Program-made: the position numbers and the translations under genes | In this document: piece after piece, positions 14,801-50,800 of the stretch | How the letters are laid out: the number at the start of each line of letters is the position of its first letter | How positions within the stretch are numbered: the stretch's first letter is position 1 | Notes under the pieces: generated by a model | Told to the model about the DNA's origin: nothing | What the model saw: only the letters and a program-made list of their open reading frames with translations | Database searches by the model: none | Origin: Bispira polyomma | Lineage: Eukaryota | DNA: 64,000 nucleotides | Assembly (NCBI GenBank): GCA_965649765.1 | Contig: OZ287751.1 | Location: 44,268,001 to 44,332,000, forward strand | Direction: 5' to 3'

Positions 14801-17800
14801 TTTACTTTAAAAGAGTAAAATTGTAACTAGACCATTGGACCAAGTTTGTTAGACAGAGAATTGCATAAAACTACTGGACAAATTCCAAAGGCATATCTAC
14901 TTGAGTTTCACAAAAGCTACTGTTGTTTAGCTAAGGGGCAAAAAGCTGACACGTTTTTGCCATCCGAGTAAATTAAGTCCCCCTCCCACAGCGACAGTGA
15001 AGAAAGTCCACAAGGAGACTTTACAGTAATTAATGGTTGGGGGGTTTTTGTGTCGAGTATTGTATTCTTTTTGAAGATTAGGAAAAGGATCGCAGTATGT
15101 CACATCAGATACAAGTATACTGTGTCGTAATTTACATGTAAAGTGTCTGCCAACTCCCACACTGGGACCATTGGAGCACCCTGAACCCCCCTCCCTTTTC
15201 CTCCCCACACACCCACCCACACCCAACCTCTGAGCACAGAGGCCAATATTGACAAGTCTAAGAGCAGAGTCCCTCACTGTCTTGTATTAGTACAGGGTAA
15301 ATAGTTTACATACCCCCCAAAAAAAATAAACAAAAAGAGAGGGTTAGGTTTCTGTCAAAAATCAATTGCTTTAGAACCTCTATTATCCAAAAATTTCTGG
15401 AGAGCAAGAGCTAATTTAGATAATAGAAGACTAATAAAGGCAGTTTAGCATAAAACAATAAGAAGATGTACAAGTGTGGGAGTAAAAGTGTGTTGTTAAA
15501 ATTAAATATTCATATACATAGGTTAATCCAGGATATTGTACAGCAAGGGGGTGGATGGTTGGGGGTGGGGCTACATAGGGGGTCGTCCTGACCACATAGA
15601 CTCGGATTCGCCTATGACATAATAGAAGTATGGTCTGTGGTTGGTCTGGATATTGGAAGGCCCCCGGTTTAACTCCTACTAATACCGCTAGGGCTGTAGT
15701 GAATAACATCCTTGGGCCAGAGGTGAGCACAACATGGCCCGCGACCTAGGCTATGTTGCAGGACACATGAATATGGTTGATTGATTCGATTCTGTAGCCT
15801 CCGAGGTCACTACACCATTGTTGGTTACTGTTGTGTAACCTCTGAGGTCACTACACCATTGTTTGTTACTGTTGTGTAACCTGTGAGGTCACTACACCAT
15901 TGTTTGTTACTGTTGTGTAACCTGTGAGTTCATTGTACCACTGTTTATGACTATTGTGTGTAACCTCTGAGGTGACTATACCATTGTTTATGCCTATTGT
16001 ACTATTGTCCAGCCTCTGAGGTCCTGAATGGAGTTGATTGGTCTGAAGCCCTGGATCCAGTGTTTGTAGAGAATTACGAGAACGACCCCACCCTAACCTG
16101 GCAGTATTTTGGCAGCTCAGAGGGTTTCTTTAGGAACTATCCAGGTAAGAGATCATGAAATATGAAGATTTTTAAATCAAATAAAGATGGCAATATCAAT
16201 GTTTTCTGTATGTTAAACAAGCAAGTGGGAGCTATTTAAACACAAGATAAGATGTTTTGTTTTTCGAGTTTGAGGAAATTTAAATTTTATTGTTTTTAAT
16301 GCCAAGTTAAAAAAGTGGTGTGACTATTACAGTTTGCAGCTGATTATTTCAACTTAAGCCAGGAGAGCTGTAAAGGTATTTTAGTGGAATTGAAAGACTG
16401 AGTAGACTGTAGCAGTATTACATATTAAAAGGAACAATTAGTGCCGATTTTAATTTTTAAAACCTCAGAGTTTAGTTGTGTTACCAATTAATACAGGGGT
16501 TGGAGGTGAGTCTATAAATACCACTAGACCAGTTAAGCCCCACAAAACTGTACAAATATATATTCAGTATATGGAGTCAGACATGTGACATAATGTCAGC
16601 AATATTATCAGCTGACCTCACAGCTTTTGGAATGTTTGAAAAAAAAATAATCATATTTAGAAAGGTGTAAAATCGTGTTTTATGTACCAAAACATTGTTT
16701 TAGGTTGACATTTTATATTGTGTCAACGTTTTGGGAAACTTTCTCTAAAAAAAATAGAAATTAAAATTGACACTGAAAACCTTGAAAATTTCTGTAACTA
16801 CTAAAGTTTTGGTAGACATTTTCATGGGCGCCGTGTAATAAGAAAACTTAATGGTCCATATACCATCATAGTAGAGTGGGATACGCAGGGTAGTGTGTAA
16901 TAAATAGAATGTTATCTGAGCAATGTTACTGATAAGTTTTTATGCTGTGTAGGGCTGCGTTAGCATCAATTCCCAACCTGACTTTAAAAGAAAAGTCCTT
17001 TTCTCAATATAAAGGGAATTTGACTTAACAGATTTCTTATGGGGTCCAACTGTCTGATATAAAAGTATTCTTTGTGTCGATCCCACTTAAAGTTGCGGGA
17101 GATGGCTGTTTGTCAAAAACTCTTCAGTAATTCTGTAATTTTTTCAATAAATAGACCTTTCAAGTCTCAGTAAATAATGTAAATATTTTTGAGGCCCTTG
17201 TAGAAAATTACACTTGTGTTAGCCATTTGATTACTGAATGTTAACTGTTATACACTTTAAAGGATTAGAGTGGGAATTTGGTACAGTTGATTTATTTGAC
17301 TGTAGGACACGAGGCTGGTAAGACACTGATATAAAGTACTGGTGTATGTAGCCTTTATTTGGGCTCTAGTTTTATCTTTGCAAATTGTTTTGCACTTAAT
17401 AGCTAAAAGCACCCTTGCCGGGTAAACACCATTATATCATTGTGTGAGGGATCCATTAATTACAATAAGGATGTGGGAAACTTTGCACGACATTTAAGTC
17501 AGGACACCTAGTAAGTGTAATCCTGGTAAACCTTCTCTTTTAAGTTCGGATCTGTAAAAACTTTTTGACAATTTAAATGTTGTTTAAGTAATTTAAGCAT
17601 TATTTGTTTTGAAGTAAAGAGTCCTGAGTTAAAACCGTCCTGAGTTTTCATCTCCTTTGGAGTCAATATCTTAACCCCTCTTCCAGGTAGACGAGCACGT
17701 TGTACAAAATCTAATAATAGATTCATTCCTAGATCATCAATACAAACACTTTATGGTTTTAATGTCAAATACCATTGCTGTTAAATTCAAGTCTAGACAA

Positions 17801-20800
17801 TAGTAGTACAGTAGAACCACTATTATGGAAATTTCTGTTATCTGAATATTCCACTTGATGAACTCATTCCTATTTTCCCAATCTCTTCCTATTCTAATAT
17901 ACTAAAAATACCTCTTCTATTTTACGGACCTTCTAATATCCAAACAAAACCATGCTCTTCCAAGATGTTTAAATAATAGAGGTTCTACTGTATTGGAAAT
18001 GTCAATCATATCTATAACATATTGGGAAACTTGCATTTTATGTTTATCCATACTACTTTGCCTGAAGGTATTTGGAATGCATTTTTGTTCTCAAAAATCC
18101 CATTATTTCTCTGAGGATGAATGTGCTCTATTTATAATACAATAGCCAGTAATTCTCAAGATCATTTGTTTAAGGTTTGTTAATACACTTGTTTCATAAG
18201 ATAATCTAGATCACCATCTTCTCTTTTAGACTTTTAAAATAAACTAAAAGTGCCCATCTTTTTCATCTGGCCAGTACCCCGATTGTCTGACATTTTGGAA
18301 CCTCTAGTACAGTTTACGTTTAGTTCAAAATGTACTCATATTTATGATAACTTTCTTTAAGCACTTGTTTAAAATGTACACAGCAATTTATAAACCCTGT
18401 GTAGATATTACGTTATTATTCCTACATTTGTCATCATCAGCATTTATCATTATTCCTGGAATGTTTAATTTTCAATTCTGGTACATTTTAGAAAAACAAG
18501 ATTTTTTATTAATCTGATTTTTAGTTTGACTGTTAAATTACAATGGAAAAACTTTATCTGAAATATTTGGAAATTAAAATTTCAGATCTCAATAACACTT
18601 TAACAAATGCTAAATTACTATTTAAATCTTGCAACATCTTCTCAGTGCCAAACATTGACACTGTGGCACTGTTTACCAGTAAATCCTAAACTTGTCATAA
18701 GTTAACCTCGATCAGCATCTTAATGTAGGTCATCACCAATATAATAATTTCCTTTTCATACAGTCTGTTCGATTACCCTTGTTTCATAAAGATAGCTTAA
18801 TAAAGTTACATATTTTGGAAGAATGAAATGCAAAAACTACATTCCTTAATCCAAGATGGTCTTCAAAATGCGTCCTTTCTAGCTTACACTTATTACTGAG
18901 TCTTGAACACTACTAGTATTTTTACATGGAATGACATCATCTGTAAGTAATGTCATCAATAAGGTCATGAAATTAACTTATCAAGGTATGTAGAATGTCC
19001 ATATCTCTGAGAAAGATAGCATGCTTCAGAATCTCTCAATCACAAAAAGAGACTGCTTTTGGGGGGTCAGGATATGAGGTCCAGTTTAGTCACCAAAATG
19101 TCATGGTTTTTATCTTGGTCTATAAAATTACCTTGATATGACATTAACTGTAAACAATCCTTCCATATTCATATATAAACAGACAAACTTGGCCCAAAAC
19201 AATTCTACAATTCTATGTGCAGCTTTTACTGAAAATGAAGATATATGACCAACACCAGTGTGTTTTGCAAACATGCAGATACATATTTGGGAGAGATACC
19301 ATTTATTCACCCATTTAGCAATTTTTTTTATCTTTTGTTTGGTACCCAGTATTTTTTAAACCTATATCAAGATATTACTTTGTATAAACCCTTGTACAGA
19401 GCTGTAAGTTTGAGGTCTTTGTATATATATATATGTATGTACATGTGTGTAATGTTGTACGACTTACCATTGACCATACACAGGAATTCAGTGGAATACT
19501 ATGGAGATGGTGACCAATAACATAGACATGTACGATTGCAGAACAAGGGGCTGGTAAGGATTATGTCTGACTCCTGTGTGTTTGACCTTTTATAGTAATG
19601 TAGATGTTGTCTTATTTGTAATACTGAAAGAACCTTTATTATCCAATCAAAATGAGGAACATGTGTGATTCTCTTCAGATGACTCCTGTGTGTTTGATCT
19701 TTTGTAGTAATGTAGATGTTGTCTTATTTGTAATTCTGAAAGAACCTTTATTATCCCGTCAAAATGAGGGACATGTGTGATTCTCTTCAGATGACTCCTG
19801 TGTGTTTGACCTTTTGTAGTAATGTAGATGTTGTCTTATTTGTAATACTGAAAGAACCTCTATTATCCAATCAAAATGAGGAACATGTGTGATTCTCTTC
19901 AGATGACTCCTGTGTGTTTGACCTTTTGTAGTAATGTAGATGTTGTCTTATTTGTAATGCTGAAAGAACCTTTATTATCCAGTCAAAATGAGGGACATGT
20001 GTGATTCTCTTCAGATGACTCCTGTGTGTTTGACCTTTTGTAGTAATGTAGATGTTGTCTTATTTGTAATACTGAAAGAACCTCTATTATCCAATCAAAA
20101 TGAGGAACATGTGTGATTCTCTTCAGATGACTCCTGTGTGTTTGACCTTTTGTAGTAATGTAGATGTTGTCTTATTTGTAATGCTGAAAGAACCTTTATT
20201 ATCCAGTCAAAATGAGGGACATGTGTGATTCTCTTCAGATGACTCCTGTGTGTTTGACCTTTTGTAGTAATGTAGATGTTGTCTTATTTGTAATACTGAA
20301 AGAACCTCTATTATCCAATCAAAATGAGGAACATGTGTGATTCTCTTCAGATGACTCCTGTGTGTTTGACCTTTTGTAGTAATGTAGATGTTGTCTTATT
20401 TGTAATTCTGAAAGAACCTCTATTATCCAGTCAAAATGAGGAACATGTGTGATTCTCTTCAGATATCTGATTTTGATGTTTAAGTGGTAACTTTACAGCC
20501 TCTCACCAGAAAACACCTTTCTGTATCAACTCACTTTTACAGCATAGCATCCGCCGGTTTCCACTGGATGCTTTGATAACAGATATGTTTTGTCTATCTG
20601 ACTACTGTTTATTGAATCTTGATTAATATGTGTGTCACATATGATGTCACAAATGATATAACTTAAAGTTTCCAACAAATTGGACATCATGTCATTCAAT
20701 TACATAGAGGTAACTACTATTTGCTTCTCAAGTTTACAGATAAAAGAGGTTGATAGTGTGACATCATCATCTTCTGTAACATCTGCCATATAAATATGAT

Positions 20801-29800: not shown

Positions 29801-32800
29801 AAATCAGACGGTTAACCTCAACTCAAGTTAAGGCCAGCATAGGTTAGCAGGTAAAGGTCACCTTAAAGTCAAAAGTTAAGGCCATAGCCGCAGTTTAAGG
29901 TGACCTTATGTTTAGTAGAGTAGTCTAACACATTTAAATATATATGTATATTATATGTTGTGTATTTTAATAAAGCCCAAATGATGTAATGAATTTGTTT
30001 ACTCTGTGTTCCACTATATTTTCATTTGGATCACCTTGATCACTATCAGCACAGCTTGGGGGAAACTGATAAATGAACCAATAGTTAGAAATTGTATTAT
30101 TATTCTCATATAAAAACATAACAGTTTCTGGGAAAATTTGTATTTGTTTGTAATCATACTCAGTATTCATAGCGCAGTAGGTATTCTAGGGATTTATAGC
30201 ACTAATTGACTGACCACGTACATACTGTCCATTCCCCTGACTAAAGACACAAGATTGGTGACCATTTATGAATGTCCCTAAGGTTTGTTTATCCTACGAC
30301 TAGGGATTGGATGCAATGATAGAGGACCCCCGTCATCCTAGCCACTATGTATCTGCCTGTACCTGAGGTTTCCCTGCTGGGTTTGAACCCAGGTCTTCTG
30401 TGTTCCTAAGCAAGTGTGTTACTCATTAGTTCACAGTGAGCCATAAAGCTCATATAAGCATGTTTGTGATGATTAAAGAATTCTAGCCAAAATATAAAAA
30501 TTTAAAAATCTGTGGAATTTTTCAAATTAATTTATATTTAGCATTCAAGTCACTGGTTATAATTCGTCTAGGTACATCCAAGCAGCAACCTCACCAAAAG
30601 ATGTGGTCATTCTGCTGGATGTTAGCGGCAGCATGACTGGCCTTAGGATGGAGATCGCCAAGGCAACAGTGGAGAAAATCCTGGACACCCTTAGTGACGA
30701 TGACTTCTTCAATGTTATGAATGTAAATTGTTAAATTTTGAGAGCTATATTTTAGTGCCACACAAAGAGTATATCATTAATAAGCCACTGTTAGAGCTAT
30801 ATTTTAGTGCCACACAAAGAGTATATCATTAATAAGCCACTGTTAGAGCTATATTTTAGTGGTTCGCAAAGAGTAAATCATTAATAAGCCATTGTTAGAG
30901 CTATATTTTAGTGCCACACAAAGAGTAAATCATTAATAAGCCATTGTTGGAGCTATATTTTAGTGGCTCGCAAAGAGAAAATCATTAATAAGCCACTGTT
31001 AGAGCTATATTTTAGTGGCTCGCAAAGAGTAAATCGTTAATAAGCAACTGTTAGAGCTATATTTTAGTGCCACACAAAGAGTAAGAGTAAGTCATTGATA
31101 AGCCACTGTTAGAGCTATATTTTAGTGGCTCGCAAAGAGTAAATCATTGATAAGCAACTGTTAGACCCATATTTTAGTGCCACACAAAGAGTAAATCATT
31201 AATAAGCCATTGTTAGAGCTATATTTTAGTACCACACAAGGAGTAAATCATTAATAAGCCACTGTTAGAGCTATATTTTAGTGGCTCGCAAAGAATAAAT
31301 CATTGATAAGCAACTGTTAGACCCATATTTTAGTGCCACACAAAGAGTAAATCATTAATAAGCCATTGTTAGAGCTATATTTTAGTACCACACAAGGAGT
31401 AAATCATTAATAAGCCACTGTTAGAGCTATATTTTAGTACCACATAAAGAGTAAATCATTGATAAGCCACTGTTAGAGCTATATTTTAGTGCCACTGAAT
31501 AGGCTTAACCTTTTTCTACACAACATGGCAGTTGAAGATGAATTAAAATTTGTATTGTTTGGCCTGTCTGTGAAGCTCATGCTCCCTGTATTGCAGTCCC
31601 AGTTTGTCATTATTGTTTTCGTTTTACTTCTCAGTTTTCCTCCAATGCACGCTATGTAGATGAATGTTTCAATGGCTCCCTGGTACAGGCTAATGCTGAT
31701 AATAAAAAGGTAGGTTAAAAACAAACAAAAATAACAACAACTATACTACAGCACATATATTAGAATTAGATTATTACTTCTCTCTAAAGTCTATATGATC
31801 AAGAGGGTAGTTTAATTTTATTAGAAATACCCATAGTCAATTTATTAGAAAAAACTCCTAGTCATTGCTATGAATCAATTTCCTGAAGGTAGGACAAGTA
31901 AATTAACATTGGTCTGCGAATCAGCCACACATTGATAATGATTGCTGAAAAATGGCTGAAATTGTATTGTATTGTATTATGGATTTTGATATTATATTGA
32001 TGCAATGTATCTTCTAAATCAGCAATATCAAAATATGTGGGTGTTGCAGTAAAATGTGCAGTAAAATGTACTATGCTGTGCTAAAATAATGCTGCATTAA
32101 AGTTCAATCTGAAGAGATTTTGCAAAAAAAAAATGGTAAGCCTATTGGTATTTGGTTTAATGGCTGTAAATCACATCAGTATTTTGATAACATTAGCACA
32201 CTTGTCTCACATGTTGTTCTTTGCCTGTGTTCTGCTATTTATAATAGAGAATTTCCGAGGCTCTGAAGGACATGGCTACAGAAAACATTGCCAGATTTCC
32301 TGAAGCCCTCACTGAAGCCTTTGAACTGCTGAAAATGGTAAATTGTGTCAACACTGACACTTCACTTCATTGTTCATTGAATTTCTTAAGAATTGTACAG
32401 TAGTAATAATATTTTATTTCGGTGACAAGTGTATATCATACATATAACAGTTTAGATACAGGTTTGTAAAAGACAAACAAAGAAAGAACACCCAACCATT
32501 ATGGCTTATTAGTCACCGTCAAAAATCAATACAGTGTTAAACTTTGGTGAAACAAAATAGAATATAATTACAAAAGTGGTTAAATTAGTGGAAATTTCAT
32601 CCAGCTAAAATTTCTGCTTAGTATATAGCATATAAGTTTATCAGAATATCACACTTGGAACTGGGCATTTGTGATAAAATCATTTGTAAATCATCAAATA
32701 TACTGATAAATAGATGAAACTATTGAAATAATGTCAACAAAGTAAACTACATGTAACTGTAATGCATGTAATCTGTAAGACAGAAATTTCTCTCTGACTT

Positions 32801-35800: not shown

Positions 35801-38800
35801 TATTTTCCAAATCGTAGTAAAATAGCTAGTTTTGAGTTGAGCTTGAAGAGCTACAGAAACATATTTAGGCCAGGTCTCCAAACTGACAGAGAGTTTTAGT
35901 GGAAAGAGTGTTTTCAAATAATAAAAAATACCATGCACAATTAATGTACCAAGACTTGTCATGCAAGTGCATTACTCTGAGTAGAAGAAAAATTACAAAA
36001 AGAAAAGAGATTGAAAACCCCCCCTATATATAACCTGGCTTTTCTCAGTACTAAAATCTAACTGTGAGTCCACTGATACTGAATGCTTTCAAAGGAGGAA
36101 GGTAAAAGGGAGAAAATAGAATTCTTTATGTTATAATGGGTTGCGTGCAGTTCAGAACAGACCATTTTTTAAATGCCTGATAGCCAGCGAAAATTGAGAA
36201 CCAATAGTAGTCTTGTCAAGGCTTATATAATTTAACCAAATATGGACGTCTAATGAGCCTTGATCAATAAATCATAATGTGACAGAAAATTGTGGCGATA
36301 GAATGATTTGGGGCTGACAGAGAATATACAGCTAAATATGAAAAAGACAGTCTTAGTACTTGAAAGTTCTTTCTGAGGAAGTTAAGTCATGTAACTTGTG
36401 TGGCCTCCTGTGGTTTAGCAACTGGTCTGGTGATTAGAAGGTGTCCAGTTTGACTCTCGCTAACTTCATAATGGTTACTATGTTAGCTTAAAATAAATGG
36501 GCAAGATGTGAACATGGCATTGCCAACTGGGGATGACAATAGGTCTCTACATCTCTGGGGCCGTATTCACAAAAGATCTTAGTCTTAGCTAAAGATGTTG
36601 GTCTTTGATTATGGTAGAAAACTTTATGATTTTGGTCTTAGTCGTAGTGATAGAAAGAAAAGATACGTTTGCTCTAAACACTGAGACCAACAGTAGGCAG
36701 TCTTACATATTTTACACATAAATAATAAGCTTAAGACTAAGTTAAGATTAAGACCTTTTGTAAATACGATGACGCCTGGGTAGAATGGCAGTGAGAAAAT
36801 TCTGGCTTTTTATCCAGTTTTTATATATCTTCTTTATATACAAATGAAAACATAAAAGACCCGCAAGATCCAACCCTTTACGAGCTCCGATATCAGAAAT
36901 AGACGGTTTGTTTTCCCTGGTGAGCCATTAGATTAGAAACATACATATCAAACAAGAAAAGTCTGCTTACATTGTAGTAACTCGTGTGCTTTGTGTCTCC
37001 AAACATGACTTCATCTTATCATTTGCCTTATCATTTGTCTTAGTATCGCTCTTTATATATAAAAAAAGCAATTGCAATAACAGCATTTCTTGTTTTGTGA
37101 CAAAATTTACTTTTTCATTTGCAGTGAAGTGATTTTGTTTTTTTTGGCACTACAAATAAAAATATAATAGCCCATGGTTTCAGTTCAAGTATGTCAAGCA
37201 CAAAACTCTGGGATCCCTGATGTACCACAAAAACTGGGCTAGTGTTATTAGTGTAACTATAGTCATTACTAATTAGGGAGGAAAATGCTTGGCCTATCTT
37301 TTATAAAAATCTCAACTCAAACTTAAATCTAAAGTCTCTGTTAGATCTCTATCTAAACTGATCTCTAACTGAACTGATCTCTATCTGAACTGATCTCTAT
37401 CTAAACTGATCTCTAACTGAACTGATCTCTAATTGAACTGATCTCTAACTGAACTGATCTCTATCTAAACTGATCTCTATCTAAACTGATCTCTATCTAA
37501 ACTGATCTCTGATCTCTATCTAAACTGATCTCTATCTAAACCGATGATCTCTATCTGAACTGATCTCTAACTGAACTGATCTCTATCTGAACTGATCTCT
37601 AACTGAACTGATCTCTATCTAAACTGATCTCTAACTGAACTGATCTCTAACTGAACTGATCTCTAATTGAACTGATCTCTAACTGAACTGATCTCTATCT
37701 AAACTGATCTCTATCTAAACTGATCTCTAACTGAACTGATCTCTAATTGAACTGATCTCTAACTGAACTGATCTCTATCTAAACTGATCTCTATCTAAAC
37801 TGATCTCTAACTGAACTGATCTCTAATTGAACTGATCTCTAATTGAACTGATCTCTATCTAAACTGATCTCTATCTAAACTGATCTCAAACTGAACTGAT
37901 CTCTATCTGAACTGATCTCTAACTGAACTGATCTCTAATTGAACTGATCTCTAACTGAACTGATCTCTATCTAAACTGATCTCTAACTGAACTGATATCT
38001 AATTGAACTGATCTCTAACTGAACTGATCTCTAACTGAACTGATCTCTATCTAAACTGATCTCTAACTGAACTGAATTGATCTCTATCTGAACTGATCTC
38101 TATCTAAACTGATCTCTATCTGAAATGATCTCTAACTGAACTGATCTCTAACTGAACTGATCTCTATCTGAACTGATCTCTATCTAAACTGATCTCTATC
38201 TAAACTGATCTCTAACTGAACTGATCTCTAACTGAACTGATGCAAAGTCAAATCTGACTGCATATTTGAATTCAGTGTGGACAACTCTTCTAAAATGAAT
38301 AGTTACAAGTACATGTTATTTCCATGTCGAGGTACTTCCACATAGCCTCCAGTTGAGTTTAGTCGGAGTTTTATGATGAGTTTCTTTGGAGAATAACAGG
38401 TCCCTGCTTCAACTCCAACTAAACTCAAATCTCTGGCCTCTAGATCTTAGTCTGCAAAAAACATAGATCAAATCAGAATTCTTATTTGAATTCAGTGTTG
38501 AAAGCTCTTTTTAAAATGTATGGTTCAAAAGTATAGGCTACTTTCAAGACCTTAGTTTTAGTGTAATTTTACTTAAGTTAAAGGTGGAGTTTGTGTTTTT
38601 TTTACGGTGAGAATATCGGTGCCGTGATACTGTGTGATATTTATTATTTCATTTAGAGCACCGGAGTCAGTAATTACTGTGGGTAGTAAATAGCTTTTTG
38701 TTACACCTGTCATCTAGTGTAAGGTGATTACATTACCTACTCCTGTTTGGCTGGGTAATTAGGGAGGTAAAAATAACATGTACTCTGCTGTGTCATTGGT

Positions 38801-41800
38801 CTTTACCATGCTTCTTCTTTCTAAGGGTCATTTTTATGATTAATATACCACACCTCTAATTGTGTTATATGCATCATTAACATGAATAATATACCCTAGC
38901 TATTATTTCACTTGAATTATAAGGACTCTGAAATGTGCCACATATCTGAAAAAAATTACCATCTATAAAATTTGGAATATAAGCCAAGTCAGCATTTTGA
39001 GTACACATGTCCAACTGGTGATAAATAATAGCATGTGTGAGCATATGTGAGTATTTCTAAATCTTGCAAAATATCTGCAATTTTATTTCGCATCAGATTT
39101 CAATATACATGTAAATTAAAACAATTAATATAAAGCAATAACATAAGCAATCTTATTATCTACAGAAAGGTTTTGATAGGAGCTTCTTGATTATAAATAG
39201 ATTTTTACAATTAATTCGACATAATGTAAATACATAATTTGTTTCAGTTATTTTTTAGTGGTTTGTTTATACCGAACCGAACTACACACACAGCGATTTA
39301 TACATGCGCACTCAAAATGCTGAATTGGCTTATCCCTGAAAACAGGATCCTCCTTAGTATCTAAATTTTATAGTGGGTTTCATTGGGCTAGAATTTTTTA
39401 ATTTTGGGATGTTAAAATTCATTCTTAGTAGACAGAAAGGTTGAATAATACTGGTTCTAGTTACAGAGAGTAAATTGTTGACAGTACATATACACCCTTT
39501 TGTTGGTGCCTGCCTATCCAACATAAATATTTTAGTTCTTATTTTATTTTCCGTATCTGTAATATTATTAAATCTTTGGCCTCTTAGCTGTTATTTCCTA
39601 TATTGATTGATTGTACTCACAAAAAGAGCAGGATTGTAGGGGAATCGCTCAATAGATCTATAGAGGTTTAGTGTTTCCCTAGCAGTGTAATGGTATCCAC
39701 TCCCCTGGGGGCCAAATGTGGATCAACAGCAATAAGTGCTGGCCATTTAGGCTGACACTAGTGTTGTCTTTTAATACCATAATGAACACAGTTAAAGACT
39801 TAGTCTGATCACTAACTTTTTGTTATCTTTGTTTTTCGAGGCAACAAAACATTATTGATATTGATATACAGTAGATAAAATGGAAAATGTTTAAAACAGA
39901 TGCTTACATCTCTGTAGTTTTCCTTTATGACTATAAAATTTATAATTCAGCTGAGCCAATATTGATTAAAACCCCCACATATCTTAAATCTCAAATCTGA
40001 TTTTCTTATATGGAACTATATTTAAAGCATGACTGTATACTCAAATTAATTGTGGGTAAAAAATACAAGGCCTTAAGAATGGATTATTTTAAGAAACAAA
40101 AATTTAATTCAGGGCCTTCATTTGAGTTGAGCAAGAGTTTATGAAAAATAACCTGTTGCTGCAGAAGTTTACACCATTCACACTAGTGTGTCAGTAGACT
40201 GTCCTTTGCATAGAACATAGCACTTCAGCATCATGAACTTTCTGTCAATAGACTACATTAATACTCTGGAAATTCTATAAAAATTACAGATTTAAACTAT
40301 AGTAATAGTAGTCCTTAGCATACGAACAGAGCATTTTAGCATCATAAACATTCTATTCTGTAAATCCACAGATAAAAAAACTGCTTTGTCTATGGTACAG
40401 CATTCAGCACCAAAAGTTATTCCTTGTAACTATATCTTTGGTCCAATAGTTGATTACTCTATTTTGTTAAACTTGAGGGTCACATTGGTGTAAATGTATA
40501 TTTATTTATTGTAGATCACTTGAGTTCTGTGCATTTTTATAGTGCTTGTTCTGGCATTTTATGCAATTGCAAAAACAAAAGTATATATGAGGCCATTATG
40601 AAAAGCGAGGCATCTTTGGTGGAGTGTGAGTTTGGAATCTGAAAGTGTTCAGTTCATGGGAATATATACCTATCAGTAGTCAAGTGGTTGACATTAAAGT
40701 GGAAAACCTACATTAGTGCAATTAGCAGGAAATTGATGACAACCTACAGTTATAAGCAAAGACTCATGCAAATGAAAAAAATAAATGAGGTCATTAGGAA
40801 AAGCCAGAAGTATTTCTTTAGTGCGAGTCTAAAATTTGAAATTTTTTTCAATCTGTGGGAATATACCAATATTCAAGGGATTCACATTAAAGTGTCAAAC
40901 CCTTACATTAGTGCAATTAGTAGGAGTAGAATTGCTGTAGTTCTGGACAACCTATATTCAAATTTGAAAGATGTTCTGAACCTGAATCTTACAGATCTAC
41001 ACATAATACAAAGCCTGTGTCGTGAGTTATCAGTACACTTTTTATCTTTTAGTCTGTTAATCTGGATCTTACTATGTCTGAAGGCCATTTCACATTTTGG
41101 GTCCTATGCATCCAACTATATTATAATGTCTAATATTTTCAAATGTTGCCATAAAATATTCGACTTGCTTAGTGCCAATAATATACCAAAGACAGTGGCA
41201 GTATTGACACATAAGTGTCCTAACTAACAGTACAAAACTACATTCTTCATTATATATTCTTCATTGAGCAGCTGCTGTTACTTATTTAGAGAATAATACA
41301 CAGTCTGCACGCGTCATTTTATTTATCAAAATAATGTTGAACTTATTTTGCTCAGATGATTAGAAATATTTAAGTTGTATTTAAAATATATGCAATTTCC
41401 TGTTTTTTTTTACCCATTACTGTAAGTTCTAGATCCACATACAAATACATCTATATAATATATAATAAAAACTCTTAATTTTACAGATACGAGTATTCAC
41501 ATTTCTGATTGGTCGAGAAGTTGGTGAATCTAAGCAAGTGAAGTGGATGGCCTGTGCAAATAAAGGTAACATGATACTCTAATCAGTCTAATGGGAATTG
41601 GATACTGGCCTCTTCACCAAATTGATTGCAGGTTCAAATCCTGTTCGTTCCTTCAAACTTGATTGTTTGCTTGTTACCAAAACTAACCATGTTGTAAAAC
41701 AAGTCTTGAAAGTCATTTGTGAAAGCTTTTTAATACTTACTTTATGCATACACTCAAATTTTAAACATTTTAGAGTTGGCAACAGACTTGCTGAAGTCTG

Positions 41801-44800
41801 GTGGTTTGTAGAGCAGAAATCCTGACCAACTACCCTGTTCCCCTTCCACCCATCACAAATAAGCTGCCTACCATGGCATCATTATTAATGCAAAGATGTT
41901 AAAGGCAACATTGAACCCAAACTAAACGAACACAAACATTTTACTGTTGCAAATGAGCTCTGTGGATATGGGAAAAAGTTTTGAGCAGACAGCCCAGTGT
42001 TATATTAATATAACAAAAAACGGTCTTCACCATCACCTCTATCCTATCCATCCATTTAAAGAGTGACTCAAAAGATTGATCTAACTCACAGTGTGTGAAT
42101 TTTGTATTTTTGTCATGTCATGAGATAAGAAGTAATGGGCAGAAATCAGGAGGTTCGTCCCAGAGATGTAGTGTTGTAAGAGGACTAGACCTTAGGGCCA
42201 CAGAGGGGAGAACCAAGGGCATAGACATAATTACCATTGAGATGCTTCTTCTTTAATGTGACTCAGCTGATCTGTAGCTTCATAAGGTATTCAAGTAGAA
42301 ATCTGAGATAAGAGATTTCAAAGAACACGAGTGTCACAAACACATGCTGCTGATGGTTCCTGGGCATTTAGCTTTTATGTACTTACTGATAGCAAATCAA
42401 GCTTTAATGTTTTTTCACTCAATATGTTCATGCACTTGTCCCTCTTTTTGTATAGGTTACTACTCCCATATTTCAACACTTGCAGATGTTCATGAACATG
42501 TCCAGGTATGTAGTTACATGTAGTACTGAGGGAAATATCATTTGCATATGTCATAATTATATCAATATATTTTTAACAAGTAAGTCAAGAACTTGTAATA
42601 TACTTTTTTAACAAATAAGCGATTTCCATATTATTATTTTCTTTTTGCTTTTTTAATGAAAGTATATAAAACTATTTGATTAAATGGTTGTGTTGGATTT
42701 TAACTAAACAGGTATTGAACATATACCCAGCAAGTTGATATATACATGTAGTTAAACTGTAACACATAGTTTAATAACTCAACAATATGTAAAACTTAGT
42801 TTTTCTTATGTCATTGCATACCATACACGCAGTTTCTTGTAGATTTAAAATGTTCTTCTCTTGTAACATAGAGTGAATTATATAATTGTCATTATAAAAT
42901 AAAATAATGATATCATCGAAGTAACATCAAGAGCAATGTTGGCTGTGTTGAGTACATATAAAATGCATTTTATCATTTTATAGACATCAATATTTTCTGT
43001 ACTAAAAATCCTTAACAAATTACAAAAGGGAGGATGGGACATTGTTAGAGAAAAGGCTGCAGTGGCCTAGTGGCTAGAAGTGTTGGTTTCACAAATGTGA
43101 GTTTGAATCCTGTATGCCCTTTTATATGGGAAAGTTTGCCAGGTACTTGCCGTAGGTCGCTTGTTTGTACAGCGCTTCAGCACTGGCTTCCTCCATCATT
43201 AAGTTTGGCCGTAGTGCTATGACCTAAGCTGTTAACAGCGTTATGAAACCCAACTAAATCCAAATAAAAACTAAAGTTAGAGAAAATAATGTATTTTATG
43301 AAGAGAATGTATGTAACATTGACTTTTTTGTTTAAACTGTACCTTTTATTGTGCAACACTAAAATGACAAAAATACTGCTGGAATGTGAGATTTACTTGT
43401 CTGCCATTATAGTTCAGTATTGTATTTGCTGAAATATTGCCATTCTGAGATCTTAAAATCTTTAAAGAGGGAGGGGCAATTATTAGAGGGTCAGACTTTT
43501 ATTACAGAAAATATGGTGAAGTATGGTATAATATTATTTAAATGACATTCTATATTAGAATTAATAAAAGCTAGAATATAGTGAAAATGCATTTGATTCT
43601 GTAGACACAAAAAATAGTGGAATTTATATTTTATGTTACCTGTCATATAAATTATATTGTAATAAAAATAATGGATATTAAAAAATAAGTAATTCCTTTT
43701 TACTGTAGCTTTATCATAGTTTCCCTTCTACTCTTGATAATAAAATTTTGTATAAATCATTTACTGTTTGGAAATGTTACATTTTACTGGCTTTGGTTGA
43801 TTATGTTGACATATATATATTTTCAGTAGAACCTGTGTCATATGAACTTCTATTATCCAATATTAATTGATCTAAATATTAACTGATTCTGTTGCTGTGT
43901 TTTAGAAATACGTGTTAAAATGCAAAATACAATCCCATATTCAATTTATAAACTCAAGTTTACACTCTCATATAGAAAGTTTTCTACTTTTTGTACCAAA
44001 ATGGCTCTTTTATTTTATAAACCTTGCTCCTATTCAGACATATTTACTTTCCCAAAGTGTTCAGATAAAAGAGGTTCTACTGTATGTAATATTCAGTTAT
44101 CAAGCCAACCTTATTTTGCTTACTTTGTCCTTTTATAGAATACCAATATCTAGTACAAACCCTAGTTGTATTTCAATTTTGTAATGTATCTGCTTATGGT
44201 TTAATATTATTTTGTTAACCTTTTTAAAAATGAATACTTAGATTTTAAGATACATTTTTATTCCCTGTTTAAGACATACCTTAATTTTGAAATATATTTT
44301 ACATATATTTTACTTTTTTTTGTCTCACTGATATAACTAAGGATGTTATTTCTACATATCTAGATAGACTGATCAATAAGCTGAGAGACTTTTCATTGGT
44401 AATTACCAGTAATTAATGACTGTATGTCTATAACCACTCTTTGAAGATGTTCCTCACATTTGGTACAAATATTCATTAGTAACTCCTGGTGTGATCTCAT
44501 TTTGACCTTTGACTTTAAATCAAAGAGCTTGACCTAAAGACATTTTTTCTGAACTATATTAACTACTTCCCATAGAAACTTCCTATTTTGTACAATTATT
44601 TATTAGGGACTGTAGTAGATATGCAGCACCATGCTCTGACCTCATTATGGTGTCTGACCTTGTAGTTATGATCCTGACCTGAAACATTTGTTTTCAGACT
44701 ATATCTCTAACTCCTTACTACTTTATGTCAGCAACTACTATAGGAAATGAATGGTTTCTCCTTCCCTCTTTTATTGTACAACTATTGCACTCAGAAGCTG

Positions 44801-47800
44801 TAGCTGTTGGGTTACAGCTTCGCCCAAAAACTAAGAGAAAATTGTTTACAAAGGTCATGAATTAGAAATCACAAATTTAAGATATTATGGTATCCTTTGT
44901 TTATACTAACTATAATATATTGACCCCTGGTTATCACATATGGATATGAAGCCAGTGATGTGTGTGTGGGGGGGGGGCTTTAGAACTCAGGTGGTAGTCA
45001 ATATACGTATAAAAATAATAATAATCTAGTGTACCCTTTACCTTAGGATTACATCCATGTGATGAGTCGGCCCATGGTTATCAAACGGGCTAGGCCCACC
45101 ACTTGGACCAGTGTCTATGTAGATGAAGCGGTAGGTGGTGGATATGTGTATAGAGTTTAACTCTCTCTGTTACTTAGACAATAACCATCTACACCTTGTA
45201 CAGTAGACTCTGGAGATTGTCTAATATACCCAGGATTGGGTCCTGGCTGTTCAAATTCCACTTATTAATTGAATTAGGAAAATGGGAAAAGATTACAAAA
45301 ATGGCCGCTAGTTGTATAAAAATCCGACTTCTAATGGCTCTAGAGAGTCTACTGTACCTAGGTAGTATTATAAACACACCAGGGATGTGGTATTCACAAA
45401 AGGTTTTAGTCTTAACCATTAATTGGTGGTCTGAGCTGTTGACCATCAATGTCAATATTTTGGTCTTTAACTCCTAGCAACATTAAAAATAGATTTTAGC
45501 ATGGCGCTAACTGTGTTTGTCGGACTAAGAGTCTAAGAAAAATCCAAGGAATTTTGTAATATTCCAAAAAATAATCTCAGGTTTAAGCTTAAGTAAAGAC
45601 TGAGCCCTTTAGTGAATACTGGCCAAGGTCATCAGGCTTTGACTTCTATCTTGTATCAGCTCATGTTGCTTGTGACAATTATATAGTCTTGAATGATGAC
45701 TTTAGAGGGGGGTTGTATAAGGTAGTGTGACAATGTTAGTTAACTTGATGACTTCTTTGTTAATTTGATTATACATACTTATTCTGTGGACATACATTCC
45801 AACCCCTTTCAGTAGAATTCTGCATGGTTCCTTAAGATGCGACTTTTCCATTCCTCTGTTGCTATTTTATGGTGTAACTTTGATATTATAACAATACACC
45901 AAAGTAAGTTTAGATTGAATTCAAAAATCAAGTATTGACTCTACCCATATAAAAGCCTTAACAGGTCTTACAAGTTGCAACTGTAATGACCTTTTCCATA
46001 TAAAAAGTTTTACAATTGGACCCACCTTTTCTCTATCGAAGGTTTTACAACTTGCAAGAGCATGATTGCCTTTTGGTGAAAAAGGTAGGCTTTGTTAGTC
46101 AAAGAGTGAGTCAAAGCTTGGCCAAGTAACCCCTGGAGACTGGGTCACACACATTCTACATGGAGAATAATCAAAATATATATATCCAATCAGTTTATGG
46201 TAGCTTCACAATAATATGACAATTGATCTATCAATTTCCTAGCTATACATTTTTGTGCAAATTATGCAGAAAAAGTTAGGAATCAACTTACCTATAGGGA
46301 GAAAGACAGTAAGATATGTGTCACTGAACTGTTTAAGAGAAGCAGCCATAAACTGAAATAGGTGTACTTAGGAGAGTTAAAATCTTTGTACAATGACATG
46401 TTTTTCTGTTGTATTATCTGCATTCTGTGTGTTAGGGCTGGTATTCTTGAAGTAAATTCATGCTTAAACTCATACTCGGCTCGGATATAGGCTTTTTAGA
46501 AATGGAAATAACCTGTACTTATGACCATTCGTTTTAATAGAGCTATCATCACTGAATTCAAATATAAAGTCAGATTTTATATATGTTTACAGAATCCAGA
46601 GTTGTAGAGAATCCTGATTTGAGTTGAGTTTGAGCTGAATATAGGTCCGAGAATATAGCCCAAGATCTTTTCTACACACAATATTATTCCGTATTGGTGA
46701 CTCTATGTATAATCTGCTTTACATTACACACTCTCCTGCACAGATTATAGTGGTTCTAATTCTCTCTGTTTGCACTACATGCACCCATTTTACTTACAGA
46801 GGCAGATAACTAATACATGTACTTCCAAGGGGTATGGGTGTTATTGTATATTTATTGCACTGCTATTTAAGTAAACTTTGTCTATATCAGAGCAGCATCT
46901 GCCAGTTAGACCACTGTTTTTGGAGGCCATCTTTCCACAAACAACGCTTGTTCCAATTCCCTCAGCAATAACATCTCACATTTTGAACTGAAGACCATAT
47001 TTTTTATCAAACTTTTTACTAAATCTTCCCTTTGTCAGTTTCTGTTTTTGCAAATTTGCTTTTAAATGGACAGTGAATGTCACTGCTTCGTTCATGCGGA
47101 AAACTTCACCAGGTACTTGCCATAGGTTGATAAATTCCAGTAAAAATGGGACTACCTTAACCAGTAAATGCAGCTGTAAGAAAATAGAGAGTACTGTAAA
47201 ATACCAAATAATCATCACTACTCTTTCTGTACGTATTACTATGCATTTTTCCCATGTGGAACTTTAAAATGACAAATTAACTGTAGTTTTGTGTAATATT
47301 GGGGACAAGCTGCTTGTATCTTTGAATGATTGACTGACCATATTTTCTTTCATTTCTGTCTCTAATATGTCTTGATATAAGTGTAAACTTTCTCTTTAAA
47401 TGTGACCTAATGAGAATGAAACTTGTCAAGTACATGTACATTATAGAAAATCCAATCATTTTAATTATGGTGCTTATTATATGATTAGATTTATAATGGC
47501 CTAGAATGTATTACCTGTTCTAGTGTAGATCTCCATCAAGCACATTATATTGCCTTCCTTCAGCGACATCAAAAGACCTTGTTTTCCTCAGTGCTGCAAA
47601 CTATACTTTAACCCAAATGTAGACATATAGCCCTGTAATTAATTTCAATTTAATTTTCTTATAAATTTTCCATTTTTGGTGGAACTACTTTATTGAAATA
47701 ATCAAACACAAATATATATTGGGACGTCTTATTTTTACTCCTAATTCCGCAAATTTTTGTTTCTAATTTCACAAATTTGGTTGAGATATGTGATCACAAA

Positions 47801-50800
47801 AAAAGAGCAAGATACTCATGCACTATTATTGTATGCTAGTTTTGTGGTTTTGTGTCTGTTACTGGTTAGAGGTACCTCTTTTGTTTAGCAGTATAATTCA
47901 TATTGCTGTCTTGTTGTCAAATTTATTTGAAATATGCATATGTGTGTGTATATATATGAAAAACATAACAATGTTTATATGTGAAATATCAGTTTCTACA
48001 TTTCATTTCATCCATCATTGCAAGATGTTATTTAGTTTATGGTTAGTTCATATGGACAATTAAAATATCTGCTGTATACACATGACATACCTATATCTAA
48101 TACTACATGGCACACCTTCTAATGGTACATGACATACCTATATTTAATACTACATGGCATACCTGTCTAATGGTACATGACATACCTATTATATCTAATA
48201 GTAACTGTACATCCCCCACACAGGATTACATTGGAGTGGTCAGTCGGCCTATGGTGATTGCTAGACCTGACATTTCAGTCTGGACACCAGTCTATTTATC
48301 TGCCATTTCAGATAATAGTGAGGTTTGTCACTGATTTCTTTCTGTTCTACTGGAACAGAGTAACTGTATAATCCCTTTAGATATATCTATAGGTGGGGGA
48401 GTTTTAAGTACTTTGTGTATGGTGTTTACTGGTGATAGAATAAATGGTTTATTACTAAAACCTCCATATAGTGAACATTCATGGGACCCCGCCAAAATAT
48501 TACCTATAAAGGGGTGTTCACTATTTAGAGGTACTGTACATTTCACCAGTATCAAAAGGGGACTGTGAAAAAGTGTTCACTATAGGGAAGTCTTGACTAG
48601 TCAGAGTTGTTTTCCCAACAGCTTTATGATATATATTTATGGGCTTGTAAATTAATTATTATTTTATCTGATCCTAAAAAATTTTGTACATACTTTCTGG
48701 TGCAGTTTTTAAAAAGGTTTACATGCAATCAAAGTTTGAATATATGAAGGTAAAGGTAAATATTAGTTGCTGATCAAATCTTTGTAGTGTGAACATTGCC
48801 AACATTTGTTTGAAATGTGTGATACATTTTCAGCAGCAATAGTATTTAATGTATTCTGTGTAGCGCCTCATTACTAAGGGAACAATACCTATATTCTATA
48901 GAGATCTACTTTCTTTATTCTGCTATAAAAGTTTTTAACATATTTTGCATTTATTCATTTATTTGCATGGCAATCAAACGTTATGCTCAAAACAAACTTT
49001 TTTTTAGTTTTCCTGTAAATATGAATAACAATTTTTCTCCCATTTTGCCCTGATTCATAATAAACCCTATTTAAATTTGCCAACTTTTGTATTGGTAAAT
49101 CATTTAGCAATGCAGTTGATCATCAAAAATATTTGAAGGACATTTACAAATCGCTTTCTTTGATGCTGCCTCCTTTTTATTAGGATCCTGTATCAGTTAT
49201 TGCCAGACCATTGATCCAAGCAAGTAAGGATCGCTTCGTTTGGCCTTCTTCTGTCCTAGTAGATGAGCGAGGAGTCTCGGTATACACACATTTTTTCTTC
49301 TCTTATTTTGAATCCCACCAACTTTTTCTGCATCTTATCACCCTACAACCTCTTGTATAAAAAAACAGTCCCTATTTTACTAGAGGTTACCTTTGAATGT
49401 TTATACTCCCACTGAAGGCGAGTGGTTTTTGTTCTCACCTCAATTCTGACTAATAGTCTGCCAGCCTCTTTCTGGCAGCAGCACTTTGAGCGAACTTCTA
49501 CAGCAGAACCTCTATTATCTGAAGACCTTCGAAGAGTATGTTTAAGTATGGTAAATAGAGGATCATTAAAGAGAAGAGGCGGAGATCTAAATATATAAAT
49601 TGGGAGAGTGAAATTGAGTTCATAAAATTGAATATTTAGATTATAGGAGTTCAGATATCAGAGGTTCCACTGTGCCTCTAAAACAAGACTCAAGGATCTG
49701 TATTGCCTGACTCAGAAAACTATTGTTATCTTGGGTAGGATACCTTTTTCAAACATTTTTTTAAGATAGAAATTAGAGGTTACACTTTGATAATAGTGTA
49801 GTATTACCAAATGGTGCAGTGATAGACTAAATGACCTCTGCCAAGGAAGTTATGTTTTTGTCAGGTTCTGTTGAATTGTTTGTTTGTTTTTCATCGGGAT
49901 TACACATAAATTGGTAAGGTATATTCACTCTCCTATAAGTGGCCTTTTACTGGATATTTTTAAAGAAGGAAGCCCTAGTGATAACACCAACCTATTTCAA
50001 ATTTAACAATTATAGCATTGTGCTAAACGTTTTTGCAGCTTCTGGATTGGTCATGTAGTCACTCTTAACTTAAAAATGATTTAAAAAGGTGAACTATAGA
50101 GTTTTTTCCTCCCATCCGTCATAAAAGGTTTTTACTTCACTATAACATACTTTTTGTTTTTGTCTAATAGGGCTATGTATAGTTTCTAAATTTTAAAACA
50201 GTAGTTTGCTTTTATCACGGAAAAGTAAGTAGTTCTTTAAGTTGCCTGAATACCCAAGTCATTTTTGTTTTTAACCATTTTATCCATACATAACTATAAA
50301 ATCACCTTGTATGACACAGGTTGTGCATGACAATAGGTTCTCATCATACATCCAAAATATATCAGCTGACTAGACTAAAATTGTTAAAATTACATCTTAA
50401 ATAGATTCTTACTAACTCTGCATATAAATATATTTTGGAGTATAAAGTGAATCAGAAATTTCATGGTATTATAAAATGAATCTTTGTTTTGAAATATTTT
50501 AGGATTAATTAAGATTAATAATTGAATTGTGACGTTACAAGTTTGTGTTGTCAGAGTTTGTCTTCTTATAGTGTACTAACAATCAATCACATATAATGTA
50601 CACTGAAATCTGTGGTCTCTCTATCTCTCCAAACTAAACATATTCTAAAGAAACAAAGTTACATGAAATCTGACTGTGTATTCAATTTCAGCATTGAAAG
50701 CTCTACTACCAAAGTTGAATGGTTACAAGAATATTATGGCCACGTAGTGGGATCACGTAGTTGGATGTACACAAAATTCCATAAAAGCTTTTATCTGAGT

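What the first reader, a model, noticed from the sequence alone, without database searches (positions are those of the whole stretch)
17263..49279. Combinatorial ligand pocket: both halves of the alpha2delta dCache_1 amino-acid/gabapentinoid site lie on duplicated alternative exons (up to 6 variants)
Seen: of the exon positions in this window only two are duplicated, one upstream of the VWA domain (2 copies) and one just downstream (3 copies). Established: in alpha2delta proteins the VWA domain interrupts the first dCache_1 domain and splits the amino-acid-binding motif into YxxxxRxWY and Y-x-D...D (human alpha2delta-1 W223, Y236, R241, W243, then Y450, D452, T461, D491; numbering from memory). 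Seen: cluster 1 carries the W223/Y236/R241 equivalents and cluster 2 the Y450/D452 equivalents, while the T461 (LMT) and D491 (GTD) equivalents sit on constant exons. The copies differ at these residues: F vs Y in cluster 1; YVD vs YLS vs LVD in cluster 2. Only 1B+2A rebuilds the full consensus. Inference: one gene may produce a small Dscam-style repertoire of channel subunits with different or disabled ligand sensing. I know of no description of this for alpha2delta genes but could not search.
Basis: partly seen in the sequence, partly recalled or inferred. Interest (0 to 1): 0.93.

Follow-up and report, generated by a model that had tools for sequence, protein, structure and literature searches.

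The report
Swappable exons in calcium-channel ligand pocket
A marine worm's calcium-channel helper subunit (alpha2delta) has old, conserved spare copies of the two exons that build its amino-acid-binding pocket, so one gene can probably make four to six versions with differently shaped pockets; I found no paper describing this, and its function is untested.

Summary
The exons are real. The gene is an annelid alpha2delta-3/4-type subunit (70% identical to Capitella). Of at least 31 exon positions only two are duplicated: 1A/1B (55/70 nt; skipping or double inclusion frameshifts) and 2A/2B/2C (84/99/96 nt, phase 0). Two cluster-1 copies also occur in Capitella, Dimorphilus, Lingula (both used in RefSeq isoforms) and the hemichordate Glandiceps. 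A 2B copy recurs in four named annelids and one unnamed metagenome contig, is under purifying selection, and always lacks D452 (S, once A). A second paralog in this genome (alpha2delta-1/2 type) also has three copies of the same exon.

The functional reading needs correction. A constant Phe at A215 predicts no gabapentinoid binding. F236 is the family norm, and the conserved 1A/1B difference is loop length. D452 lines the pocket but is not in the published motif, so 1B+2B also completes it. 2C has no ortholog found and may be decaying. There is no RNA for this species.

Best reading: an ancient 2x2(+1) alternative-exon system retuning the pocket rim, not Dscam-scale. Not found in the literature searched; the scan had noted it only on this window.

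The parts
16013..16144 (+). Constant exon c3 (end of VWA_N region, first dCache_1 half); carries W205, and Y207, F215, N217 in place of alpha2delta-1 V207, A215, Y217
   Evidence: Phe215 as gabapentinoid block per PMC9901441
17263..17317 (+). Alternative exon 1A, 55 nt, phase 1 to 2; W223, short loop, F236, R241, first two bases of W243
   Evidence: counterparts in Capitella, Dimorphilus, Lingula, Glandiceps; 55-nt single copy in Ridgeia, Paralvinella, Owenia
19484..19553 (+). Alternative exon 1B, 70 nt, same phases; loop 5 residues longer, Y236
   Evidence: Capitella 1B 73 nt with the same WN...IDxYDCR pattern, pS 0.88 / pN 0.11 over the last 11 codons
30572..30722 (+). Constant exon c4, start of the VWA domain with DxSxS MIDAS
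31635..42505 (+). Five constant VWA exons (31635-31709, 32248-32337, 32830-32943, 41487-41565, 42456-42505)
45047..45130 (+). Alternative exon 2A, 84 nt, phase 0, strong donor GTAGGT; Y450, D452; ancestral form
   Evidence: pN 0.13-0.20 vs pS 0.65-0.98 against four annelids
48224..48322 (+). Alternative exon 2B, 99 nt, phase 0, weak donor GTTTGT; Y450 kept, D452 to S, C-terminal loop 5 residues longer
   Evidence: counterparts in Capitella, Dimorphilus, Paralvinella, Ridgeia (divergent) and contig L029; five of six form a clade at 96/96; pN 0.27-0.32 vs pS 0.78-1.0
49184..49279 (+). Candidate alternative exon 2C, 96 nt, phase 0; divergent (Y426 to P; Y450 to L or V depending on register); no ortholog found
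   Evidence: homology beyond chance; pS 0.7-1.0, pN 0.43-0.58; no second genomic match
55736..55792 (+). Constant exon c10 (LMTS strand, T461 position)
56195..56275 (+). Constant exon c11 with the D491 equivalent (GTD)

Best explanation
Shown: old tandem exon duplications in an annelid alpha2delta-3/4-type gene, kept by selection. Cluster 1 must be used one-at-a-time for a productive mRNA, because any other choice shifts the frame. Inferred: cluster 2 is also one-of-n, with 2A (strong donor) as default and 2B (conserved weak donor) as a regulated minor form, giving four solid isoforms and two more if 2C is alive (about 55%). Inferred function: the swaps keep the fold and, apart from the family-typical F236, the core amino-acid anchors (R241, W243, Y450, D491) but reshape the rim of the first dCache_1 pocket: 1A/1B change the length of the flexible loop after W223, and 2B replaces D452 by Ser, adds a Pro-containing segment before the strand and lengthens the following loop. 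This would shift affinity or selectivity for a small endogenous amino acid and so how strongly the subunit traffics and boosts Cav1/Cav2 channels in different cell types. It is not a gabapentinoid switch. Confidence in conserved alternative exons 1A/1B/2A/2B is about 0.9; the figure given is for the whole statement including pocket tuning.
For: Splice sites and frames. Two cluster-1 copies in Capitella, Dimorphilus, Lingula, Glandiceps, downstream copy longer in all five genomes (55/70, 55/73, 61/64, 55/61, 61/64 nt). Lingula RefSeq X2 uses one copy, X1/X3-X6 the other; the Capitella model uses 1A and the Dimorphilus and Glandiceps models the downstream copy. 2B in six genomes, never with D452, whereas D452 is near-invariant in 30 annotated homologs and 52 of 62 distinct segments. 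pN well below pS for 2B. D452, A453, L454, Y450 line the leucine pocket (10.1101/2022.10.03.510667). Residues 225-231 are unmodelled in a Cav1.2 structure (PMC10981686) and low-confidence in the AF2 model of the Dimorphilus protein. The alpha2delta-1/2-type paralog in this genome has three copies of the same exon, one with Y450 to H. Motif mutants impair trafficking (PMC12303104). Hand arithmetic, post hoc: 5-6 of at least 31 exons carry pocket residues, so two random exons both doing so has about 2-3% chance.
Against: No RNA for this species; no protein with a 2B or 2C segment was found. Cluster 2 has no frame-based exclusion and no shared intronic element was found. Amino-acid binding by alpha2delta-3/4 rests on docking only and the site is called partly occluded. 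Both exons also encode the linkers that join the VWA domain to dCache_1, so effects could be on the hinge or on partner binding. Single-copy exons in several metagenome contigs that I take for gutless clitellate worms have His at 452, so D452 is not essential everywhere. Ridgeia and Paralvinella have one cluster-1 copy; Owenia, Batillaria and Branchiostoma have one copy of each.
Confidence: 0.55

Rival explanations
1. The exons are real alternatives, but what is tuned is a protein-protein surface or the VWA/dCache_1 hinge (contact with alpha1 extracellular loops or a synaptic partner); pocket residues ride along.
For: The shared cluster-1 difference is loop length, not a motif residue; Cache1 and VWA contact alpha1 loops; exon 2 starts with the helix leaving the VWA domain; vertebrate alpha2delta-1 splice regions A-C and optional small exons just after this exon in amphioxus, Lingula, Glandiceps and crabs alter nearby loops.
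Against: The D452 loss is shared by all six 2B copies while neighbouring positions vary; loop 225-231 is unmodelled, not docked, in one Cav1.2 complex; paralog copies also differ at Y450.
Confidence: 0.3
2. Cluster 2 is not mutually exclusive: 2B/2C are in-frame cassettes added after 2A (long loop insertions) or yield non-functional, down-regulating isoforms.
For: All cluster-2 combinations stay in frame; related species insert optional exons at this junction; 2B donors are weak.
Against: 2B keeps the SRP and WTxVY pattern in exact register with 2A across species, expected for a structural replacement and not for a loop insert.
Confidence: 0.08
3. The extra copies are dead duplicates. Unlikely for 1B and 2B; plausible (about 0.45) for 2C alone.
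For: No transcript evidence here; 2C has Pro at the invariant Y426, an ambiguous register, a weak donor (GTATAC), an out-of-frame GTAAGG inside it, and no ortholog in five other genomes.
Against: 2B and 1B are conserved with pN far below pS. 2C has saturated synonymous sites yet keeps acceptor, register, R-P and W and an open frame, which only 14% of 96-nt windows of the neighbouring intron do.
Confidence: 0.05

Closest known systems
alpha2delta-3/4 subunits (CACNA2D3/4, Drosophila straightjacket)
   Same: VWA_N, VWA with MIDAS, split dCache_1; Phe at the A215 position; F at 236 as the common state; best hits are named alpha2delta-3/-4.
   Different: No duplicated pocket exons were found described for them in ten literature searches; the vertebrate isoform proteins retrieved showed no such swap (not tested at genome level).
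alpha2delta-1 splice regions A, B, C (PMC9901441)
   Same: Splicing in the cache domains; the delta-C variant has lower gabapentin affinity.
   Different: Those are cassette exons or an alternative acceptor in loops, not homologous exon swaps carrying pocket residues.
Tandem duplicated exon substitutions / homologous mutually exclusive exons (FGFR IIIb/IIIc; PMC8373072, PMC7954323)
   Same: Same phase, similar length, homologous peptide, ancient, variable residues at a ligand site, which is the general trend reported for such exons.
   Different: Two separate clusters build two halves of one pocket split by an inserted domain; the same exon is multiplied in two paralogs.
Dscam1 exon arrays
   Same: Several clusters that could combine.
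   Different: 4-6 isoforms, not thousands; no docking/selector elements found; no sign of stochastic identity coding.

Membership tests
alpha2delta subunit | VWA_N, VWA with DxSxS MIDAS, dCache_1 split by VWA | tested here: met
   ortholog model folds like alpha2delta-1, TM 0.8, E 1e-40
alpha2delta-3/4 type | No RRR motif; Phe at A215 | tested here: met
   RTR in both copies; FFRNYP
Gabapentinoid-binding alpha2delta (1/2 type) | Small residue (Ala/Thr) at 215 | tested here: not met
   Phe on a constant exon
dCache_1 amino-acid motif (PMC8915833) | Y236, R241, W243, Y450, D491 | tested here: met
   all five in 1B+2A and 1B+2B; F236 with 1A; Y450 lost with 2C
dCache_1 amino-acid motif (PMC8915833) | Actual amino-acid binding | not testable with these tools
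   no docking or binding assay available
Homologous mutually exclusive exons | Tandem, same phase, similar length, homologous peptide, canonical splice sites | tested here: met
Homologous mutually exclusive exons | Conserved across species under purifying selection | tested here: met
   1A/1B/2A/2B; not shown for 2C
Homologous mutually exclusive exons | Each copy spliced, one at a time | tested here: inconclusive
   cluster 1: Lingula isoforms and frame logic; cluster 2: no transcript evidence
Dscam-type arrays | Large arrays with docking/selector RNA pairing | tested here: not met
   2-3 copies; no shared k-mers or conserved complementarity in five genomes (exact-match test, limited sensitivity)

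The most novel reading that the evidence does not exclude
Invertebrate alpha2delta genes use recurrent or very old exon duplication to swap the walls of the amino-acid pocket combinatorially, in both paralog classes, producing channel subunits that sense different endogenous ligands or none; this would be natural evidence that the pocket has a physiological ligand-sensing role and would supply ready-made variants to identify it.
Probability: 0.3. Interest if true: 0.85.

Novelty: new variant of a known kind. Interest (0 to 1): 0.7.

Why it matters
Why alpha2delta has an amino-acid pocket, and whether it matters in the alpha2delta-3/4 class that does not bind gabapentin, is open. A conserved splice choice that removes a near-invariant pocket residue across annelids, repeated at the same exon in a second paralog, suggests selection acts on this site and gives natural isoform pairs to test in Capitella or Platynereis. 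The Capitella and Dimorphilus gene models retrieved here each show only one form, so the extra exons look unannotated.

Tried and rejected
RNA runs: none for this species; the single read-laying run showed only DNA contigs, dominated by repeats, with no usable polymorphism. Protein search with a 2B/2C alignment: nothing (length limits make this blank weak). No 2B-type segment among retrieved proteins. No third copy seen in Capitella, Dimorphilus, Ridgeia, Paralvinella or L029. No conserved intronic motifs or pairings. Cluster-1 tree not possible (19 columns), so one origin versus several for annelid, brachiopod and hemichordate pairs is unresolved. Mercenaria and Asterias loci too long to fetch. 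I could not confirm from papers which Cache1 loop touches alpha1. Rejected: gabapentinoid switch, F/Y236 as the key switch, assembly artefact.
Full report
OBSERVATION. The window holds the middle of an alpha2delta gene on the + strand. Exons were placed with tblastn of retrieved homologs and fixed at AG/GT ends. The five alternative copies are 1A 17263-17317, 1B 19484-19553, 2A 45047-45130, 2B 48224-48322 and 2C 49184-49279. All six one-of-each combinations are stop-free. Cluster-1 exons are 1 mod 3, so double inclusion or skipping frameshifts; cluster-2 exons are phase 0 and any combination stays in frame. Scored only against other species' exons, 2A, 2B and 2C rank first to third among 660 candidate exons in 144 kb, and 2C beats 3000 shuffles. 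A profile scan over the whole gene, extended with neighbouring genome stretches, finds at least 31 exon positions and no other duplicate. DNA contigs reproduce the cluster-2 region.

IDENTITY. The closest retrieved protein is Capitella teleta (70.5%), then Ridgeia and Dimorphilus, so the host is very probably an annelid (inference). RTR in place of RRR and Phe at the A215 position place it with alpha2delta-3/4. HMMER alignments to solved alpha2delta-1 chains give the numbering.

CONSERVATION. Gene loci with introns were fetched for eight species. Cluster 1 is doubled in Capitella, Dimorphilus, Lingula and the hemichordate Glandiceps, single in Ridgeia, Paralvinella, Owenia, Batillaria and Branchiostoma. 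Lingula RefSeq isoform X2 uses the first copy and X1, X3-X6 the second, the only transcript-level support. In all five doubled genomes the downstream copy is longer; F versus Y at 236 differs only in this species and Capitella, and F is the majority state among homologs (77 of 94). A 2B copy follows 2A in Capitella, Dimorphilus, Paralvinella, Ridgeia and an unnamed metagenome contig L029. Five of six 2B copies form a 96/96 clade (31 columns, Ridgeia is a long branch). Against the window, 2B shows pS 0.78-1.0 and pN 0.27-0.32 (Ridgeia 0.53); 2A shows pN 0.13-0.20. Every 2B lacks D452 (five Ser, one Ala) and has a weak donor, three of them the same GTTTGT, while 2A has GTAGGT in four of five; L029 is the exception with a strong 2B donor. 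2C has no counterpart elsewhere; its synonymous sites are saturated, pN is 0.43-0.58, and it keeps frame and register, so it is old and either divergent-functional or recently decaying.

SECOND PARALOG. At G000:C4:15.26-15.31 Mb (minus strand) lies an alpha2delta-1/2-type gene with the RRR motif. Between the same flanking exons it has three phase-0 copies of the exon-2 position, starting at 15290997, 15285058 and 15281794, with YSD, YWD and HLD at 450-452; each beats 2000 shuffles. The middle one is weakest and lacks the Trp. Whether this is shared ancestry or recurrence cannot be told from 28-residue exons, and its conservation was not tested.

THE POCKET. The leucine site in alpha2delta-1 is lined by W205, V207, Y217, W223, Y236, R241, W243, Y450, D452, A453, L454 and D491 (rabbit numbers minus 2), with Y236, R241, W243 binding the carboxylate and D491 the amine (10.1101/2022.10.03.510667). 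The published motif has five residues and excludes D452 (PMC8915833; PMC9901441). So both clusters do carry pocket walls, but the swaps mostly spare the anchors. The constant exon 16013-16144 has Phe215, which PMC9901441 identifies by docking as the reason alpha2delta-3/4 admit only small amino acids and no gabapentinoids. The variable cluster-1 segment matches residues 224-233, largely unmodelled in a Cav1.2 structure (PMC10981686) and below pLDDT 50 in an AF2 model of the Dimorphilus protein, as is the loop after D452; that model matches alpha2delta-1 at TM 0.8.

MECHANISM. Shown: duplicated, conserved, in-register exons; frame-enforced exclusivity of productive cluster-1 mRNAs. Inferred: exclusive use in cluster 2 with 2B as a regulated minor form; mechanism unknown, no docking elements found. 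Inferred: altered pocket rim changes small amino-acid binding and thereby channel trafficking, since motif mutants impair trafficking in mammals. I put this at 0.55, a surface/hinge effect at 0.30, cassette-type use of cluster 2 at 0.08, and dead copies at 0.05 (about 0.45 for 2C alone).

KNOWN OR NEW. Homologous exon swaps at ligand sites are a known kind (FGFR; PMC8373072; PMC7954323). Described alpha2delta splicing is cassette-type. One cluster is present, uncommented, in Lingula RefSeq models. Verdict: new variant of a known kind, interest 0.70.

Noticed in passing
G000:C4:15274000-15302700 minus (L020:4912-4998, L026:976-1059, L021:7712-7795): alpha2delta-1/2-type paralog with three phase-0 copies of the same post-VWA exon (YSD, YWD, HLD); its cluster-1 region is single and fused to the VWA exon.
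   Followed up: partly
window 23100-29900: DIRS-like retrotransposon in the intron after 1B: reverse transcriptase ORF 25189-26883, weak tyrosine-recombinase match 27289-28272, split direct repeats.
   Followed up: partly
window 57853-58581: GIY-YIG endonuclease ORF, probably a Penelope-like element fragment.
   Followed up: no
window 19568-20450: About eight copies of a 112-nt minisatellite starting just after the 1B donor; other arrays at 30730-31600 (52 nt) and 37230-38200 (16 nt).
   Followed up: no
L003:60662-60733 and 61392-61466: Lingula has a pair of homologous optional exons just after the exon-2 position; amphioxus, Glandiceps and crabs also have optional small exons at this junction.
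   Followed up: no
L034-L037, L039-L055: Metagenome contigs that I take for gutless clitellate worms carry a single exon 2 with His at position 452.
   Followed up: no
L006:29954-30186 and 32584-32718: Owenia lacks the intron after the cluster-1 exon and the intron before exon 2, and has no duplicates at either position.
   Followed up: no
G000:C4:32664310-32665740 minus: Intronless 1197-codon open frame with distant VWA/cache similarity, possibly a retrocopy or CACHD1-like gene; similar long frames on C1, C2, C7, C8.
   Followed up: no
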